Assembly (NCBI GenBank): GCA_033442325.1
Contig: JAWQFM010000001.1
Coordinates: 1,610,138-1,674,137, forward strand
Direction: 5' to 3'
Source of the DNA: Salpingoeca rosetta
Lineage: Eukaryota; Protista; Choanoflagellata
DNA length: 64,000 nt
Made by a program: the position numbers and the translations under genes. Positions 32,696-42,921 of this stretch are shown piece by piece; position 1 is the stretch's first letter; each line of letters opens with the position of its first letter. The notes beneath the pieces were generated by a model. It did no database searches and was not told where the DNA came from. It saw nothing but the letters and a program-made list of their open reading frames with translations.

Positions 32696-32851
32696 CAACA
32701 ACAACAACAACAACAACAACACGACAAGAAAAAACCGCTTCTTCTGATTGCGAGGAAGAAGAAGAGCATTCACACACTCACAAGCGATCGCATCATTACA
32801 ACAACACCACCAACAGCAACAGCACCGCTCACGCAGTGACCGCAGTCCGCG

Positions 32852-33724
32852 ATGCGGGAGGCGCTGGTGGCCAGCTATGTGGTGAAGCAGGGGCAGATAC
32901 ACCGAGCCTGGCGAAGGCGGTGGATGTGCCTGTACAGGGATGGCGTGATTGAGTACCAGGTGGACATGGGTAGGCCGATTCGCGGGCGCATCGACATGCG
33001 GGACGTGAAGGAGATCGTGCGTGGAAAGGACTGCGCTGACAAAGCTTGGCCGCACGCGGCACCCAAGTGGCCACGCTTCTGCTCTCAAAACACCATGTTT
33101 GCCCTCATCACGGAGCACCGCACATACTACCTGTACACATTCACCCCGCGCGACGCCTTTGCGTGGATCGCCCAGCTTGAGCGCACGCAGTTTGATCTCG
33201 TCAACGAAGCAAGCAGCTGCAAACCCCGTACCTTCTCCGTCTCCATTGCAGTAAGCCACATCCCTCTACGCACGTGTGCGCGTGTCTGTGTGTATGCGTC
33301 CAGTATTTGTGTGTGTGTGTGTGTGTGTCTGTGTCTGTGTCTGTGTCTGTGTGTGTTTGTGCGTGTGTGTGTCTGTGTCTGTGTCTGTGCGTCTGTGTGT
33401 CTGTAGGTGTGTGTGTGTGTCTGCCTGTCTGTGCGTACTGTGAGTGTGAGCGTATCTTCGCCCGCCCTCTTTCTCCCGCGCTCGCGCGCGCTCTCTTCCC
33501 CTCCCCCATGTGGCTATGCCCTGCCACTTATGACGGGGGCCTTGCTCACGCCACTTGCGCTGGTGGCACAGGACGTGAAAGACGTGCGAATACCGGCGTA
33601 CCTGCCAGAGGATGTGGCTCACGACATGACACTGGCACTGGAACGCCCGTCTGCGCACATCTCATGCTGTCGCGCCACATTCACCGCCACGCCTTCCATG
33701 TTGGCTACAACCATCACTGAGACC

Positions 33725-33758
<34 letters not shown>

Positions 33759-34492
33759 TGTGTTAGGGGGGGGCTTGAGTCACCAGCCTGAACTACGGCC
33801 AGGGAAGAGTGCCCACTATCCAATAACTGCAACTACCACTTACATACACGCACACTCACTCACTCACACACTCACTCACTCACTCACACACTCACTCACT
33901 CACTCACTCACTCACACACACACACACACACACACATACACTACACAAAACCACCAACTTGCGTGTGGCACAGGGTATTGCATGGCCAGGAAACCCCTGT
34001 GGACGCTGCAACCACACACGTCCTGTACCGGCGAGACTGCAGCCCCATCATGGCAGTCACGCTGACTGCGCTGGCCACAACCTTCGAAGGCATCAACTTC
34101 GCCGGCGTCCTCACTGTCACACACAAGGACCAGCCAGAGCCAATGTAAGCGCCGTGTCAATGTTGTAAGAGCCTGTGTGGGCGTCAACGAAAGGCACCTC
34201 CATTTTGCTCAGCCGCGCTCTGGTGCTCCAAGTGATGAACACCACCCTGCATTACAGCACATGCTTGACCCTCACTGCCACCGTCCTCGCCCCCTCCCCG
34301 CACCCTGATCTTGGTTCACCCCTTGCCCCTGTGCGCAGCCGCGTGTATCTCCCTGGGATGTTTACCTATGACCCTGCTGGGGCCACGGGAACCCAACACG
34401 ACGAGAGGTGTGTGTGCAAATGAACTGGAATTGTCCACCGCGTGTGTGATGTGGGCGTCGTAAGGCTGCGTGTTTGGTGATTCGCCGCCATC

Positions 34493-34548
<56 letters not shown>

Positions 34549-34817
34549 GGTTGACAGCGTGAGCGAAGAGCACGCTCGGGTGCACATGCACATCGTCGCT
34601 GCGGAGATGGCTGCGATTCTGCAACATGCCTCCCTCGAGGACATCAACAAGGTCTGTGACGCGCGCTGCGTTGTGATGTGCGAAAACGCTCTGCCTTTCA
34701 TGTGTTCCGTCGACACACACCCTGACTGTGCATGCAAGCTCCCCACACCCTCACAACTCACTGTCTCTCCAACACACACGGTCACACATACACGTACACA
34801 CGTCAACGAACACGCAT

Positions 34818-34882
<65 letters not shown>

Positions 34883-37548
34883 TGTCACAGCTGCACGCTT
34901 CCTTTGATTCGCTTGTGCGCGAGTGCACTGGGCGACCCCTCTTGCACATGTGGATGCACCACCAGCTCGTCTCAGCCTTCATCCACGGCAAACACCCGCA
35001 GTCGTATGCAGAATTCATTGCTGCGACAATCGCTGAGCGCCCTGCAGACCGCGGCGTGAACCTTCAGGACCCTTCGCACGCGCACACAACCGCCTACCTT
35101 GCATCGCGCACGGATAGTGATGCACAGGCGCCGCCTCAGTTCTTTGCTGCACTCGTCCACAACGTATGCACGTGTCTGATAGGTGTCACGGTTGTTGGCG
35201 AATATTATCCTGCACGTGTGCGTGTGTGTGAATGCATCCGTTGACCTACTTGCGTATGCATTTGCATATACGCGTATACGTGTACATGGTGTGCTGTATG
35301 CATGCACGTGATCATCATTCCCATCGCACGCGTCTGACGCAACCCCATCCACTGCCCTCTCCCATCTCCAAACGTTCCTCAAACCCGCCTTCCTTGCTTG
35401 TTTGCTTTGTTTGCTTTGTTTGCTTTGTTTGTTTGTTTGTTTGCTTTGTTTGTTTGTTTGTGCAGGGGATGAGGTTGGCGCAGCTGGTCGGGCTCGCCCA
35501 GTTTCGCCTGCTGCAAAGGATGGCTGAGCCTGAATCGATGGAGGAGCTCAAGTCGTGCAATCCGGCGCCGGCCGCTCTCGTCGGCGCAGACGCGTTGCGC
35601 GCAGCCCTCATGCTGTGCACCATCCACGAGGCCGAGAAGCTGCGGTGCTGCTGGCGTGTGGATCCGGCGTCCACCACACAGTCACGAACCCGTGACTCAC
35701 CAACACAGGACGCAGCAACTGCAGAGAGCGAAGCCCCTGGTGATGGCAACGATGGTGACGCCAAAGCAAAGCGCGGTGGTGAAGTGGGTGGTGTTGTTGG
35801 TGCAGACAACAGCAGCGCAAAGGTCACGGTTGGCAGTGGTTCGACGATGCACGTGCGTGTGAGAGCCACTGCTTTGGAAGATGACGACGTGGTGCGTGCA
35901 GACGCCACAGTCTCGGTGAATGTGCGGCCGCAGCCCGCCACAGCAAGCAGCGAACCAGCGACAGTGGCGCCGCCTTTCCACTTGCGAGATGATGTATCTG
36001 TCTCGTTTTCACGTGAAGGCGTGCAGTGCGAAGGCATCGGCTTTGCCGGCTCCATCACCGTCCGCCGTGCTGATAATGGCCCACCGAGGTTGGTACCGTG
36101 TTGAACCCCTGTTGCGCCCGCGTCGTGGTTGAGAACCTGAACCTGTTGTTGTCTGTTGTTTGTCTGTTCGTGCTGCAGTGGCCCTACGCCTTTTGCTTGC
36201 ACTGTCTTTATGGGTTGGTGCTGTAACAACAACAACCCCTCCCCCTCCCGCCATGTTACTTGGTCTACCAAGCGTCGATTGATCACAACCATGATTATGA
36301 TTGTGCTCCTCAGGGTTGTGCTGGTGCCTGGTGTTCGCACATACGACATTGCAGGCAAGACTGGAGGCACACGCGCTTCAGAGAGGTGAGGCAGCAGCAC
36401 TGGCACGCGTGGGATGTTGGAATCAGCACACAAACCCGGGCCATGTCACATCGCAGCACTTGCTTTGCTTTTTTCTGTTGACAGCATGTAGCTTCTCTGC
36501 GGCGCCAAAAGTCGCACACACACACGTACACACGCACACACACACACACGTACGCACACGCACGCACGCGCCCACAAATGCAAACCAACACACATGCGTG
36601 CTCACTCAAACCGCTGTCAGGGTTGGCGAGGCGGATGTCCGGTTTTTGAGCAGCGTGATCGTGTGTGAACTTGTGGCGGCCCTCCATTCCGCAACGGCAG
36701 CAGAGCTCGACGTCGTACGTGCATGTGATATATGATGAGGGTATTGGGACTGGCCGTGCTGACCCCTTGACACACACACACACACACACACTCTCTCTCT
36801 CTCACGCTCTCTCTCACATACACACACACACTCTCTCTCTCTCTCACACTCACACATACTCACACACACACACACACACACCCTCTCACACATACACACA
36901 CACCGACTCACACATGTGTCCTCACGTCAACACGCGTGCATGCATGTGCTCACTTGACAGATGAGCGCTGCGTTTGCCGAGATGAACACGGCGTTTCATG
37001 GACGGCCCACACTCGCTGCTTGGCTCCACAACCAAGTCGTGCGCAGCATGTGTGGGGCTGAACACGCGACCACATCAACCCACGACACCAAAGTGACTGA
37101 TGCCGAACACAGCGCCGACATGACTGAGGCTGCGTCTTACGCATTGTTTCTTCGCAGCACGCGAGATGTGTCACAGCTGTCGCCGCAAGCACATCTTACC
37201 GCTTACTTGGCCAGTTTGGACGCAGGCTCCCCACAGCCGCCACTCGCATTCCTCGCCACATGCTTCAGAGCGGTGCGTTTCGTGTGCGATCTGCGCGCAA
37301 TGTGCGCGCATCGTGTGGATATTGTGTGGGTAGAATGTTTGCATCGTGTGGGTATTGTGTGCCTTGCTTCCATTCCAACCTTTTTTCGCGCACGTGCATT
37401 CTCATCAGCACACATGCGCTCACCAAATCATATGCGCGTGTGTGCGTATGCGAGACAGGAAAACTTGGGGAAGGTGCTTCCATTGGCACAAGCGAGGTTG
37501 CTGGAGACGCTGGTGCGAGAAATGGACGAGCAAGGAGAGACTGCGTAG
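32852..37548 (+). CDS. Orphan protein: N-terminal PH domain plus two tandem copies of an unrecognised domain
   Basis: PH motifs YVVKQGQIHRAWRRRWMCL, GRIDM, FALITEHRTYYL, AWIAQL. Eleven exons splice in frame by GT-AG to ...EMDEQGETA*. Confidence 0.8.
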
Positions 37549-38083
37549 CCGAATCATCTCCCCAGATCACGTGCGTTGACACACACACACACGCACGCAC
37601 GCACGCACGCACACGCACGCACGCACACGCACGCACACATTCACACACACACACACACACACACATTCACACACACACGCACACTCCAGTTTGCCTTGTG
37701 GTTTAGATTACGCGCGTGAGTTTTCTGCTAGTGCTGCTGTTTCGTACTGTCCTTGATACAAGGAGTGATATGTATCCGACCAAGAACAATAGAGTCGTGG
37801 AGACATCCAACACATGTCCAATGTACACACGTGCAGGACACAAAGAAGTCAAGGGAGAACCCTGTACCCCATCAGAGAGTAACGGAAACACACAAAACGA
37901 GCAAGAGCAACTGCATGCGTTGACTTGCAGGCACTGCGATCTTGCCACGAGGGGCCACATCACGTTGAACCTTGCCCACAAACGACCACTTGCTTGTGTA
38001 CACCAGAAGACCTGAAACACACCACACCACACACACAACACATACACGCACACACACAGAGCAGATTGTGGAGGTGTTGCTGC

Positions 38084-38227
38084 TCATCTGACAGTGACGA
38101 CGGGCTCGCTGACGGGCATTGCAACAACGGCGGTGACAATGGGGAGCGAACGCTGCGGAGAGTACAGCTGCACTTTGATTGGACTGGACACCATCTCTTG
38201 CGTAATGCACTGCACACACACACGCAC

Positions 38228-38322
<95 letters not shown>

Positions 38323-40637
38323 TGCAACGTGTGACGTGGGGTGGGGCGGAAGGACGGCACAACAGGCACAGTCAGAAGAGCGCGGGGCAATATGGGGTGA
38401 TAGAGAGAGGGTGTTTGGACAGGCATGACAACTATAGAGAAGACGTACACACAGAGAATATACATGGACACGCAAACACGCACACACATGTACACATACT
38501 CAAACATGCACATTATGCACGATTTGCACGTACATGCGTGCTTCGCTTCACTGACCTGAACGTTGAAGGACTCCGTGTATGTGACGCCTGGAACAAGATG
38601 TGGAATGAGGCCAGAGGGGTTCTGAATGTCATACATGCTTTCGTCCCACGTGAGCGCGAGGCGGATGTCGGACACGGCCGTCGCACTCGTGTTTTGCACA
38701 GTCACGAGCAAGCGGAATGTCGGGCCGATGCCTTGCACTGCAGCGCCAACCTGAACCACAGAAAGAAATGGAAGGAAAGCGAAAGCAAAAGCGAGAGTGT
38801 GCAAAAGTGCGTTGGTGCGTGTGGTTGGGCACACGCGTGCAAGATAGAGAGTGTGTGTGTGTGCGTGTGCGCGTGTGTGTGCGCGTGTGTGTGTCCATAT
38901 CGTAAGTCTGAGCAACAGGCCAGTCGTGGGTACAGCAACAAAGAAAAAGCGTTGTGCACAAAGCACGGATTGGTACAAATCTCAAGCATCACGATAGGAA
39001 CTGCACCTGGAACTTGACGTCTTCGAGAGCAGATGTCGGTGCAAGCGCAGAGGTCATTGCCTTGACGTATTTGCGGGCTGGCGTTTGCCATTCGCAACAG
39101 CAACGACGCGCATGTTGATGGGTGCGCGTGCATGCACAAACAAAAGACAGCGATGAGACAAACCGTTGAGAGATACCGTGGTGACACACGAAAGGGTGTT
39201 CGCGCTTGCACGTGTGTGCGTTTTCGTGTCCGCATGTGCAGCAATTGTCAAAAACATTACAGTGCAGCAACGCAAACAAACACACATCAAACACGAGCAA
39301 GCACACATTACGCGCGACCTACACACGATCACGCATTTGCATGGCAACATACCGACGAGGACCTGCAAGACGTAGTGGTCACGGCGAAATGCCTGATGCA
39401 TCGACACGGCGTTGTCCTTCTCCCGCTGCGTCTGGTCAACATAGAGTTTGGTCTTTGTCGGCACTTTGATGCGGATGTGCTGCTCTGGTGGCGGACCTGT
39501 GCCGCAATCACGTGCGCGTGGTGGGTGTGAGTTGGGGGGGGGGGTAGATGGGAGTGGATGGTTTCAATGAAACCGAAAGAAAAGCCCCATCATGGTTGGG
39601 GGCAACGGTGTGATGTGGACACGCGTGGCGTGTGCGGAGATCGCAAGAGACGCGCTGTCTGACGGAAGAGAGGCGCTCGCTGAGTAGCAAAGCCAGGCAT
39701 TGATTTGGACACCAAGAGAGACAAAACAGAAAAGGAAGATCCCACCTTTCACGCCCTTGAGCTGGTGGAACTCTGTGGCCCTTTTCAGCCGGTGCACGAT
39801 GTAGTGGCCCTCCTGCGTGACCGTCACTGCATCACGTGACACATGGATGGCAGAGTGGGATCGGGGCACGCATGCGTTTGTTGGAGAGCGGTTGTGAACA
39901 CGTGCGGTGTTGTGTTGTGGCGTGGCCGTGCAATGGGAAATGAAATGGCGACAGCACAGCAATTAAAACAACAATCCCTGACACACAACTTGGACAACAT
40001 GGCGCAACAACAGCTGCAACAACAGCTGCAACAATTGAAGCACCAACTGAAACAACTTCGACAAGACGGGCAGATCAGAGGGCAGGACGCCATGCCGCAC
40101 CGAGTACGTAGCTGTCGCGCCAGAGACGGCCGAAACGAAGCGCAGCAACACCGCTGTCGACCTTCAACGTGCTGAGCATCTCTTTGTCGCTGTACAGGCG
40201 GATCTCGCCATTCTCAAGTCCGATTAGCGTTAACTGCCGCAGAGAGGGCAAGGAGAATGGAAGAAAGCAAGGGCGATGTGACGCGCAAAGGTGAGGGAAC
40301 AGGTCACACAGGCATTATGGTTATGCACAGACACAACAGCCTCACGGAGGCGTTAACATACGTGTGCACGCGCGTACATGTACATTACATTTACACATGC
40401 ACACGTACACATGTAAATACACACGCATACACGCGTATGTAAACACACAAACACGCGCGCGCGCACGCATACAACGCACCCTGAGCATCTTTGGCCTGTA
40501 GACCATTGGGCTGTGCGCGGTGATGGGAGCAGGCATCTTGACCTGCCACAGACGGCGACCCTGTGCAGCGGTGGTGGATGGCGGATGGCGGGTGAGTTGT
40601 GGCGTGAGTAGAAGGGTGTGGGTATGTATCACAGTGC

Positions 40638-40716
<79 letters not shown>

Positions 40717-40791
40717 GAGAGACAGAGAGAGACACACAGAGAGAGAGAGACACACAGAGAGAGAGAGACACACAGAGACAGAGAGACAGAC

Positions 40792-40838
<47 letters not shown>

Positions 40839-41902
40839 GAGACAGAGAGGGACAGAGACAGAGACAGAGAGAGAGACAGACAGACAGAGAGACAGACAGA
40901 CAGAGAGAGAGGGGGGAGGGTATTGAACTGAACCTCAGCAGCCAACGAAACCAAACAGACACACACATGCGCACACATGTGAGCACACACATGTGAGCAC
41001 ACACATGCGCGCACGCACGCACACACACACACACACACACACAGGTCTTTCATACGCACGGTTCTGTGCGGACCTTTGTGCTGAAGCAGTAGAGGCAGGA
41101 GTCTGCGCAGGAGATGAGGAGCGATTTTCCGATACGGTCAATGCCAACAGCGGGCGCAGGCAGCGAAAACGAGTGATCTGCAAGCTTTCCCCTGCTTGCA
41201 GGCAAGGGCACGGCACGATTGGAGGGAGCAGAAGCATGGAGTGGATGAGTAAACAGGCCGGAGGACGATGGAATAAAGGCAGCACGTGTGGAGGGATGGA
41301 GAGGTGGGGAGGAAGCCAGGAACTGAGCATGATGGGGGTGCAGAAGGATTCGGGCACAGAGTCACATGTATGTAAAGCCACCCAGCTCCACGTCAACAAG
41401 GGTACAACGCACCCTTTGATGTGGCACACGGTGCCATCGCGTGTGCAAGCGTGGATTCTGTAGTCGGTATCCAGGGCGCCACTCGCCGTCATGCACGCAA
41501 CGGGGCTGAGGAGGGGGGAGGAGTGTGGAGGTAGCGATGATGGAGGCAACAGTCGAGTGGATGAAGTGTGACAGCAGAGAGGGAGAGAGTATGTAATGCG
41601 GGATAAGCACGTGAAACGCACATACACACACATGCACACACATGCACATGAACAGTGGAGGCATGCTTGCTCACCCTGGGAGGGACACACGGACGACTGC
41701 GGCAAAGTTTGTTGGATTGAGAACAAACACCTGACCGTCCTCTGTCCCAAGAACGGGGCACGCCACCCCAGTGTCATCGCCACCAAGCTGCACATGCACG
41801 CACATGCATATAGCATTGGAGGTGCACGCAAGTGCATGCGTGTGTGTGTTTGAGAAAGAAGACAAAAACGGAGAGGTTCGTGCACGTGAGCGATTGAGCA
41901 AC

Positions 41903-41968
<66 letters not shown>

Positions 41969-42206
41969 CCCAAGACGGGGAGGCGGTATCGTTGACAAGT
42001 GCGTCTGGGACGTACGGCCGCAACAGCTGTGTTCACAGCACGCATGCGCACCTTTGCGAGTGTGCCGACAGTTGTGATGACAGCGGGCGTGGTGGCGGGC
42101 TGCGTCTTGACCATGTTGACGAAATCCTCCCGCATCTCAGGCGGCAGCGCTGCCCCAGCACATGTCCAGGATGTGTATACGTGTGTGTGTGTGTTTTGTG
42201 TGTGTG

Positions 42207-42246
<40 letters not shown>

Positions 42247-42921
42247 TCGAGTGAGTGGGCGGGAGTACGAAGGTGGAGCTGATGCACGGCAAGAGAGAGA
42301 AGGTGAATCGAACACCACACACACATACACACATGCACACAAGCACACACTTGGGCATGGCGTGCACACGTGTCGTGGACGTACACAGGAATTTGAGGGA
42401 CCGGGGGGAGAGCTTGACGCCGTTGCCACGAAGCGTGAGCAGCGCATTCTGCAGCACATCTGCATCCACGCGCTGCCAGGGTACACAGAGATGGTGTGTG
42501 TGTGTGCGTGTGTGTGTGTGTGTGTAGCAGGTGAGCGAGTGGAGTGAGTGGCAGAAGAGATGGTACCTGAGGCAAGGACATCAAACAAACCCAGCACTGT
42601 TGATAATTGCATATCCACGTGTGTGTGCACTTGAGACACAATAGCACGCACACGTGTGACCACTGACCTCGGCGCGACGCACACCAACCCACGTCTCAAG
42701 CTCTTGCTCATCGAGCTGGGAACAGAAACATCAAGCGAATATCCCGCAAGCAATCACGCATGAATCAACGCAACAATGCTTGGCATGCAGGCGCACATGT
42801 GAGGAATACACACACACATAAAACACACGCACCGGCAAGTCCGGAAGGATGAATTTGTAGAAGGGCTTCAAGTTCTTAAACACATAAAGGGCGTTACCCG
42901 ATGCCACCGCAATGGCTGTGG

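What the first reader, a model, noticed from the sequence alone, without database searches (positions are those of the whole stretch)
34080..37548. Unrecognised ~200-aa domain tandemly duplicated behind a PH domain, with all four introns preserved
Seen: copy 1 (about 34080-35525) and copy 2 (about 36020-37548) align. Matching segments: EGINFAGVLTV/EGIGFAGSITV, LPGMFTYD/VPGVRTYD, IVAAEMAAIL/VIVCELVAAL, GRPLLHMWMHHQLV/GRPTLAAWLHNQVV, SYAEF/SYALF, AHTTAYLAS/AHLTAYLAS, LAQFRLL/LAQARLL. Introns fall at equivalent positions with phases 2,2,0,0 (donors 34145/36089, 34408/36386, 34652/36715, 35164/37273), and internal exons are 69/72, 94/94 and 273/312 nt. Inference: an old genomic intragenic duplication defining a possibly undescribed beta-then-alpha domain, recruited to membranes by the PH domain.
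Basis: partly seen in the sequence, partly recalled or inferred. Interest (0 to 1): 0.75.

Follow-up and report, generated by a model that had tools for sequence, protein, structure and literature searches.

The report
New conserved domain duplicated behind PH domain
A choanoflagellate gene encodes a lipid-binding PH domain followed by two old copies of a roughly 250-residue domain that matches no Pfam family or solved structure, occurs as a single-domain protein in sponges and several protists, and has lost parts of the family's otherwise invariant polar site in both fused copies.

Summary
Window 32852-37548 (+) is one 11-exon GT-AG gene. Its 783-aa product is identical to Salpingoeca rosetta PTSG_00439 (XP_004998988.1). 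It has an N-terminal PH domain and two copies of one domain: 33% identity over 211 aa, E 2e-29, z = 43 against shuffles. Four introns sit in the same alignment columns with the same phases (2,2,0,0) in both copies.

Single-domain members keep an invariant polar set (H-x-S-E-R, C, H-G-R, Q) in 33 of 33 sequences. Both S. rosetta copies have lost part of it.

The duplication predates the split of four choanoflagellate genera. A second, independent tandem duplication is seen in a metagenome protein.

Best reading: a PH-targeted, internally duplicated and probably non-catalytic derivative of an undescribed enzyme-like or metal-binding domain. Function is untested. The scan's notes hold nothing on this family beyond the finding itself.

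The parts
32852..37548 (+). Whole coding region of S. rosetta PTSG_00439. It has 11 exons: A 32852-33250, B 33572-33726, C 33974-34144, D 34339-34407, E 34558-34651, F 34891-35163, G 35466-36088, H 36314-36385, I 36621-36714, J 36961-37272, K 37459-37548 including the TAG stop. The product is 783 aa.
   Evidence: All junctions are GT-AG and the frame is open throughout. The translation is identical to database protein P0001 = XP_004998988.1 / F2TWH3.
32876..33187 (+). PH domain (aa 9-112), carrying the KQG...W-R-R-R-W basic motif in strands beta1-beta2.
   Evidence: Pfam PF00169 scores E 1e-8, 36 bits against a cut-off of 25.1. PDB sequence hits are the myosin X PH and the TAPP1 C-terminal PH, 1eaz. 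Foldseek hits to PH structures have probability 1.0 and target TM-scores of 0.6-0.75.
33572..35528 (+). Domain copy 1 (aa about 134-408): exons B to F and the 5' part of exon G. Beta half aa about 163-246, helices aa 268-407.
   Evidence: The HMM built from 18 single-domain relatives matches aa 171-386 with i-E 3e-47 and envelope 130-408. AlphaFold2 pLDDT is 83-96 over aa 210-400.
35529..35912 (+). Low-complexity, predicted disordered linker inside exon G (aa about 409-536). Its last third (aa about 505-539) is weakly predicted as the first beta hairpin of copy 2.
   Evidence: pLDDT is below 50 for aa 438-557, and strands 514-525 and 528-539 are predicted.
35913..37545 (+). Domain copy 2 (aa 537-783): the 3' part of exon G and exons H to K.
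   Evidence: The HMM matches aa 559-766 with i-E 6e-39 and envelope 537-775. pLDDT is 82-92 over aa 560-680, with the same order of strands and helices as copy 1.
34145..34338 (+). Intron C/D of copy 1 (phase 2). Its counterpart is intron G/H, 36089-36313.
   Evidence: Both map to the same HMM column, sponge-protein residue 113, and both are phase 2.
34408..34557 (+). Intron D/E of copy 1 (phase 2). Its counterpart is intron H/I, 36386-36620.
   Evidence: Both map to residue 137, inside the H-A-S-E-R motif, and both are phase 2.
34652..34890 (+). Intron E/F of copy 1 (phase 0). Its counterpart is intron I/J, 36715-36960.
   Evidence: Both map to residue 168 and both are phase 0.
35164..35465 (+). 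Intron F/G of copy 1 (phase 0). Its counterpart is intron J/K, 37273-37458.
   Evidence: Both map to residue 254 and both are phase 0.
34339..34407 (+). Exon D: the LPGxxTYDPAG motif followed by the degenerate H-x-S-E-R region of copy 1.
   Evidence: The residue table shows S135 to D, R137 to S, C142 to H and H181 to T in copy 1.
36314..36385 (+). Exon H: VPGVRTYDIAG followed by A-S-E-R in copy 2.
   Evidence: The residue table shows N98 to G, H133 to R and C142 to D, with S-E-R and H181 kept.

Best explanation
PTSG_00439 is a single S. rosetta gene. Its product combines an N-terminal PH domain with two tandem copies of a roughly 250-residue domain, a beta half followed by a seven-helix half. 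That domain belongs to a eukaryote-only family that is not described in Pfam or the PDB.

Shown here:
- The ancestral form of the family is a stand-alone single-domain protein. It carries an absolutely conserved polar set (N98, Y123, D124, H133-x-S-E-R137, C142, H181-G-R183, Q193, H228, sponge numbering).
- In the lineage leading to Salpingoeca, Barroeca, Microstomoeca and Hartaetosiga, an intron-containing gene was duplicated in tandem within itself, carrying four introns along. It is found joined to a PH domain.
- Afterwards both copies evolved fast. They lost C142 and, variably, H133, S135, R137 and H181.

Inferred:
- The invariant set lies around the loop that joins the two halves and the adjacent helix ends, so it most likely forms a catalytic or metal/cofactor site.
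- The PH domain keeps the K-x-G...(K/R)-R-R signature shared with TAPP1, DAPP1 and myosin X PH domains. It probably brings the protein to phosphoinositide-rich membranes.
- The two copies probably pack as an intramolecular pseudo-dimer that mimics a homodimer of the single-domain protein.
- Because the ancestral site is eroded in both copies, the module probably binds or regulates something rather than catalysing the ancestral reaction.
For: Gene and protein: the model and splice sites are. The model is identical to XP_004998988.1.

Duplication: E 2e-29 and z 43. Intron columns and phases are identical in the two copies.

Family membership: the single-domain HMM hits both copies, with i-E 3e-47 and 6e-39. 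Relatives occur in sponges, choanoflagellates, Amoebozoa and a ciliate. One environmental member lies on a eukaryotic contig next to kinesin, EF-hand and SNF5 genes. No prokaryotic relative was found.

No known family or fold. The model quality is pLDDT 96.1 and pTM 0.93. The full-length model shows the same element order in both copies.

Site: ten polar or structural residues are invariant in 33 of 33 single-domain sequences, but are replaced in the fused copies.

Age: the copy-1 clade has support 98/95, the copy-2 clade 100/99, and the two together 93/76.

Pseudo-dimer idea: an independent tandem duplication is seen in P0006, whose copies are sisters with support 97/93.

Membrane theme: the PH domain is confirmed. 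Relatives carry other membrane devices: a CaaX-like KKKCCVIF end, a C-terminal hydrophobic tail and MGG..S starts.
Against: - No experiment or expression data were available, and no paper mentions the gene.
Clustering of the invariant residues and packing of the two copies are therefore inferred only from their positions relative to secondary-structure elements.
- Copy 2 keeps S-E-R, H181, R183, Q193 and H228, so a changed but active site is not excluded.
- PH domains with this basic motif do not all bind lipids. The closest fold hit is evectin-2, which binds phosphatidylserine, so lipid specificity is open.
- The AlphaFold database, InterPro beyond Pfam, ECOD and HHpred could not be searched. 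A remote known relative may therefore exist.
- The two sub-domains were not folded and searched separately.
Confidence: 0.6

Rival explanations
1. The fused copies are still active. PTSG_00439 would then be a phosphoinositide-targeted enzyme whose site has been remodelled (for example Asp/His in place of Cys/His), or whose single working site is formed by copy 2 alone or jointly by both copies.
For: Copy 2 keeps A-S-E-R, H181, R183, Q193, Y207 and H228. All copies keep Y123, D124, R183 (one exception), L186 and Q193. Both copies have been conserved across four genera.
Against: C142 is invariant in 33 of 33 single-domain proteins. It is lost in 6 of the 7 fused copies that could be aligned at that position, and no one replacement recurs (H, D, T, F, G, S). 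The stem branches of both copy clades are long, 0.78 and 1.1, as expected after constraint on the site is relaxed.
Confidence: 0.25
2. The domain is a very divergent member of a known fold or family that these searches missed, so it is not new.
Confidence: 0.15
3. The two halves are separate genes or an annotation chimera, and the apparent fusion is an artefact.
For: Exon G contains a long disordered linker (aa 438-557). No RNA-seq of S. rosetta could be examined here.
Against: One uninterrupted frame runs across 10 canonical introns. De novo transcriptome ORFs marked 'complete' from H. balthica (776 aa) and M. roanoka (725 aa), and the B. monosierra gene model (806 aa), have the same PH plus two-copy layout.
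Confidence: 0.03

Closest known systems
Stand-alone uncharacterised proteins of the same family: XP_062515107.1 (Corticium candelabrum), XP_065179637.1 (Sycon ciliatum), and EukProt entries from Choanoeca perplexa, Salpingoeca urceolata, Pellita catalonica and Protocruzia adherens
   Same: They carry the same domain: the HMM gives i-E 3e-47 and 6e-39 to the two S. rosetta copies. The predicted order of strands and helices is the same. They share the WGINFAG, PGxRTYDPAG, GRxxLxxWMxxQ and HTxxYL motifs.
   Different: They have one copy and no PH domain. Their H-x-S-E-R, C and H-G-R set is fully invariant, whereas it is eroded in S. rosetta. The sponge gene has introns at codon 35 (phase 1), codon 130 (phase 1) and after codon 214 (phase 0), and none is shared with S. 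rosetta.
Orthologues with PH plus two copies in Hartaetosiga balthica, Microstomoeca roanoka and Barroeca monosierra (EukProt)
   Same: The architecture is the same, at 30-39% identity over the full length. Copy 1 groups with copy 1 and copy 2 with copy 2 in the tree. B. monosierra copy 1 has exon ends at or near the same positions as S. rosetta: exact at column 113, within six columns at the other two, where the alignment is gapped.
   Different: Linker lengths differ and some carry inserts. H. balthica copy 1 still has the Cys.
3-phosphoinositide-binding PH domains (TAPP1 C-terminal PH 1eaz, DAPP1 1fao, myosin X PH2 3tfm, PLEKHA7)
   Same: The PH fold is shared, with target TM-scores of 0.69-0.75. 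The beta1-beta2 motif KQG-x5-W-(K/R)-R-R-(W/Y) aligns residue for residue with TAPP1.
   Different: The PH domain here has a conserved insertion (about aa 60-80, W-x-H-x-x-P-K-W-P) that is absent from TAPP1. Lipid specificity was not tested. The rest of the protein is unrelated.
Metagenome protein P0006 (ENA ERZ23497376, 460 aa) with two copies
   Same: It also carries the same domain in tandem.
   Different: Its duplication is independent: the two copies are each other's closest relatives, support 97/93. Both copies keep the full invariant set. No PH domain is seen, but copy 1 is truncated at its N-terminus and only 139 nt of contig lie upstream. The gene has no introns.

Membership tests
PH domain (Pfam PF00169) | Profile match above the curated gathering score | tested here: met
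   Exon A scores 36 bits and the full protein 31.2 bits, against a cut-off of 25.1.
PH domain (Pfam PF00169) | Seven-stranded beta sandwich capped by a C-terminal helix | tested here: met
   The model has strands at 5-95 and a helix at 99-121. Foldseek probability is 1.0 to many PH structures, with target TM-scores up to 0.75.
Phosphoinositide-binding subclass of PH domains | Basic K-x-G ... (K/R)-x-R signature in beta1-beta2 | tested here: met
   KQGQIHRAWRRRW aligns with KQGAVMKNWKRRY of TAPP1. The motif is conserved in all four orthologues.
Phosphoinositide-binding subclass of PH domains | Actual binding of a phosphoinositide, and which one | not testable with these tools
   This needs liposome or lipid-overlay assays. 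The nearest fold hit, evectin-2, binds phosphatidylserine.
New single-domain family (provisional name: HASER-motif domain) | Significant match to the family profile over most of the domain | tested here: met
   Copy 1 scores i-E 3e-47 over HMM positions 48-262. Copy 2 scores i-E 6e-39 over HMM positions 86-275.
New single-domain family (provisional name: HASER-motif domain) | Beta half followed by a seven-helix half | tested here: met
   The order of elements is the same in the sponge model and in both copies of the S. rosetta model.
New single-domain family (provisional name: HASER-motif domain) | Invariant polar set H133, S135, E136, R137, C142, H181, R183, Q193 | tested here: not met
   The set is invariant in 33 of 33 single-domain sequences. 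S. rosetta copy 1 has D, S, H and T at positions 135, 137, 142 and 181. Copy 2 has R at 133 and D at 142.
Any Pfam-A or NCBIfam family for the repeat | Profile hit shared by family members | tested here: not met
   There is no hit for the exons, the full proteins or the 18 relatives, apart from unrelated single-member noise.
Any solved structure (PDB) | Sequence-profile or fold match | tested here: not met

The most novel reading that the evidence does not exclude
The repeat defines a previously undescribed eukaryotic enzyme or metal-binding fold. Its site would be built from H-x-S-E-R, a Cys at a helix N-terminus and an H-G-R turn. Evolution has attached this fold to membranes several times by different devices: a PH domain, a CaaX box, a tail anchor and myristoylation. 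On this reading the choanoflagellate PH-tandem protein is a pseudo-dimeric pseudo-enzyme that turns the old module into a phosphoinositide-dependent regulator.
Probability: 0.3. Interest if true: 0.8.

Novelty: categorically new. Interest (0 to 1): 0.64.

Why it matters
If the reading holds, this is a well-folded, strongly constrained protein domain with no Pfam model, no solved relative and no literature. It is shared by sponges, choanoflagellates, an amoebozoan and a ciliate, and was not found in prokaryotes (one motif-based scan; the protein searches returned no prokaryote-named hit). The ten residues that never vary in the single-domain forms point to an unknown chemistry or cofactor.

The S. 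rosetta gene is a clean natural experiment. It shows duplication with introns carried along, fusion to a PH domain, and erosion of the site. S. rosetta can be transfected and gene-edited (my own knowledge, not checked here), so localisation and loss-of-function tests are practical. The family would also be a straightforward addition to Pfam/InterPro and a good target for structure determination.

Tried and rejected
- Pfam on each exon by reference found only the PH domain.
- The ESM Atlas gave no usable hit, either for exon F or for the sponge protein.
- The word-index search with the five-protein alignment A2 returned only the query itself. Searches with the single proteins P0006 and P0018 worked.
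- Own-genome searches found only the exons of this gene. A weak hit on contig 15 (E 0.002) lies in low-complexity, partly masked sequence and was rejected.
- An NCBIfam hit of P0006 to phosphoribosylanthranilate isomerase scored 27.7 bits against a cut-off of 270. It is absent from the other members and does not fit the predicted fold, so it was rejected as chance.
- The Dpy-30 hit concerns only the N-terminal extension of the environmental proteins P0026 and P0027.
- Literature searches for the locus tag, the accessions and the motifs found nothing relevant. The 'dphaser' hits are the software name StrandPhaseR.
- My first spliced-alignment script failed on the sponge gene. It was replaced by tblastn plus an exact junction search.
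- The antisense ORF 35315-36433 has no family hit and is taken as a by-product of base composition.
Full report
**Handling of the spliced model.** I joined the exons only inside scripts that read window.fa, and used the joined sequence only for local pairwise comparison. Searches were made exon by exon, by reference. The full-length protein used later is the database entry P0001. It was returned by an exon-profile search and proved identical to my model. The window is not human. It is Salpingoeca rosetta: P0001 is EGD72419.1 / XP_004998988.1, PTSG_00439. The assembly is 55.4 Mb in 68 contigs.

**Observation.** Reading 32800-38400 and rebuilding the gene gives 11 exons with canonical GT-AG borders and one open frame of 783 codons, running from the ATG at 32852 to the TAG at 37546-37548.

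- The two halves align at 33% identity over 211 residues, blastp E 2e-29.
- The Smith-Waterman score is 247 against 33.9 +/- 5.0 for 500 shuffles, z = 43.
- Aligned to an HMM built from unrelated single-domain relatives, the four intron pairs fall in identical columns (sponge residues 113, 137, 168, 254) with identical phases. Chance agreement of four positions and phases is negligible.
- Copy 1 has one further intron (codon 185, phase 2) without a partner in copy 2.

**One gene, not two.** The deposited annotation equals the model. Transcriptome ORFs flagged complete from Hartaetosiga balthica (776 aa) and Microstomoeca roanoka (725 aa), and a Barroeca monosierra gene model (806 aa), have the same layout of PH plus two copies. 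Genomic contigs of B. monosierra show copy-1 exon ends at or near the same alignment positions as in S. rosetta. S. rosetta RNA-seq could not be examined.

**What the repeat is.**
- The exons alone and the whole protein hit only PH in Pfam.
- A profile of exons F and J was scored by HMMER against 1.84 billion representative proteins. It found nine proteins in all, of which seven are real: the gene itself, the three orthologues or fragments of them, and environmental pieces.
- Starting from the environmental two-copy protein P0006, a word-index search found 18 proteins of 263-383 aa that carry the domain once. They come from the sponges Corticium candelabrum and Sycon ciliatum, the choanoflagellates Choanoeca perplexa and Salpingoeca urceolata, the amoebozoan Pellita catalonica, the ciliate Protocruzia adherens, and metagenomes. 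A further search from the sponge protein added only environmental sequences.
- One environmental member sits on a 1.18-Mb eukaryotic contig between kinesin, EF-hand and SNF5 genes.
- A motif-based scan of 185,579 prokaryotic species genomes found no relative.
- The S. rosetta genome has no other copy of the domain.
- None of the 18 relatives has a Pfam family. A profile of them finds nothing in PDB sequences, and NCBIfam gives only noise.
- No paper mentions the gene, the accessions or the motifs.

**Fold.** AlphaFold2 on the sponge protein with the 18-sequence alignment gives mean pLDDT 96.1 and pTM 0.93. About eleven strands occupy residues 12-117, a conserved loop spans 118-139, and seven helices span 140-274. 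Three fold searches found no match:
- Foldseek against 350,542 PDB chains: nothing at E 0.001 or better, TM 0.22 or less.

The full-length S. rosetta model (mean pLDDT 70.6) shows the same order of elements in both copies, with pLDDT 82-96 in their cores, a PH domain, and a disordered linker at aa 438-557. Its only PDB matches are PH domains. Three limits apply. The two halves were not folded and searched apart, the AlphaFold database was not available, and coordinates could not be inspected.

**The conserved site and its erosion.** In every single-domain sequence that covers the position (33 of 33), H133, S135, E136, R137, G139, C142, H181, R183, L186 and Q193 are invariant. N98, Y123, D124 and H228 are invariant wherever covered. 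These residues lie in the loop between the two halves, at the N-terminus of helix 1 (C142) and at the turn after helix 2 (H181, R183). In an antiparallel helix pair those two ends meet. I therefore infer one polar site, catalytic or metal/cofactor-binding. This is inference from secondary-structure positions, not from measured distances.

The PH-tandem proteins break this pattern:
- S. rosetta copy 1 has D135, S137, H142 and T181.
- S. rosetta copy 2 has G98, R133 and D142, but keeps S-E-R, H181, R183, Q193 and H228.
- Across the four species the Cys survives only in H. balthica copy 1.
- Y123, D124, L186 and Q193 persist in every copy that could be aligned there. R183, Y207 and H228 persist in all but one copy each.
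- The independently duplicated P0006 keeps the full set in both copies.

**History.** In a maximum-likelihood tree of 28 domain sequences, the copy-1 sequences of the four genera form one clade (98/95) and the copy-2 sequences another (100/99). The two clades are sisters (93/76). There was thus one duplication before these genera diverged, followed by long stem branches of 0.78 and 1.1. P0006's two copies are sisters (97/93), which means a second, independent tandem duplication. The sponge gene has three introns (codon 35 phase 1, codon 130 phase 1, after codon 214 phase 0), and none is shared with S. rosetta. The four paired introns therefore pre-date the duplication, but they are not shared with the one single-domain gene whose introns could be mapped.

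**Membrane theme.** The PH domain is supported three ways.
- Pfam gives E 1e-8.
- PDB sequence hits are the myosin X and TAPP1 PH domains. In the TAPP1 alignment KQGQIHRAWRRRW lies on KQGAVMKNWKRRY.
- Foldseek gives probability 1.0 to evectin-2, PLEKHA7, TAPP1, DAPP1 and other PH structures.

The basic motif is conserved in all four orthologues. From established knowledge this motif marks 3-phosphoinositide-binding PH domains, but specificity is untested. Single-domain relatives carry other devices:
- the Protocruzia protein ends in KKKCCVIF;
- P0017 has a C-terminal hydrophobic 19-mer (Kyte-Doolittle mean 2.71);
- P0015 and P0035 begin with MGG..S;
- P0026 and P0027 have a Dpy-30-like N-terminus.

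These are motif-level observations. Their recurrence suggests that the domain often works at membranes or docked to other structures.

**Mechanism proposed.** About 0.9 of my confidence attaches to the anatomy: one gene, PH plus two old copies of an undescribed domain. About 0.5 attaches to the single-domain site being catalytic or metal-binding. About 0.4-0.5 attaches to the fused copies being non-catalytic and acting as a PH-recruited pseudo-dimer. The rivals are a remodelled but active enzyme (0.25), a missed remote relationship to a known fold (0.15) and an annotation chimera (0.03).

**Surroundings.** Downstream, on the minus strand and convergent with this gene, lies a BBS1 (BBSome subunit) gene. 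I draw no functional link from this. Nearly all introns of the gene contain CA/GT microsatellites.

**Novelty and score.** The gene sequence is public but annotated only as a hypothetical or PH domain-containing protein. The repeat cannot be placed in any known family or fold with the tools used, so I rate the domain as categorically new. The caveat is that AFDB, InterPro beyond Pfam and HHpred were not searched. New domain families are still found regularly, which limits surprise. Against that stand the very confident unmatched fold, the invariant site, the patchy eukaryote-only distribution, the two independent tandem duplications and the site erosion after PH fusion. Together they make this a good target. 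Interest 0.64.

Noticed in passing
window 37872-42753, minus strand: The convergent downstream neighbour is a BBS1 (BBSome subunit 1) gene. ORF pieces hit Pfam BBS1 (E 4e-11, 3e-5) and GAE_BBS1 (E 2e-17).
   Followed up: partly
window 33290-33420, 33725-33760, 34487-34546, 34826-34880, 36770-36900, 37585-37680, 38200-38320: Long (GT)n or (CA)n microsatellites fill most introns and the 3' flank of the gene. Intron F/G also has a (TTTGC/TTTG)n run at about 35395-35460.
   Followed up: no
window 33727-33973 (intron B/C): Copy 1 has a fifth intron (codon 185, phase 2, equivalent to sponge residue 56). It has no counterpart in copy 2, whose equivalent region lies inside the long exon G. Either copy 2 lost the intron or copy 1 gained it after the duplication.
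   Followed up: partly
proteins P0028, P0017, P0015, P0035, P0026, P0027 (relatives, not in the window): Single-domain relatives carry varied targeting devices. These are a CaaX-like KKKCCVIF end after a coiled-coil-like tail (Protocruzia), a C-terminal hydrophobic anchor, MGG..S N-termini, and a Dpy-30-like N-terminal motif (Pfam E 1e-3).
   Followed up: partly
L005 (ENA ERZ23497376 scaffold_6189), 140-1522: An intronless metagenome gene has two full-site copies of the domain that arose by an independent duplication. Its first copy lacks the N-terminal beta part, and in-frame stops precede the ATG, so the gene model may be incomplete.
   Followed up: partly
window 32990-33100 (PH domain, aa about 58-80): The PH domain has an insertion that is conserved in all four orthologues (C-x-x-x-x-W-x-H-x-x-P-K-W-P) and absent from TAPP1. 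Its role is unknown.
   Followed up: no
L003 (G000 contig 15, 198072-201323): A weak own-genome hit (E 0.002) lies in CA-repeat-rich, partly masked (N) sequence and is not a paralogue.
   Followed up: yes
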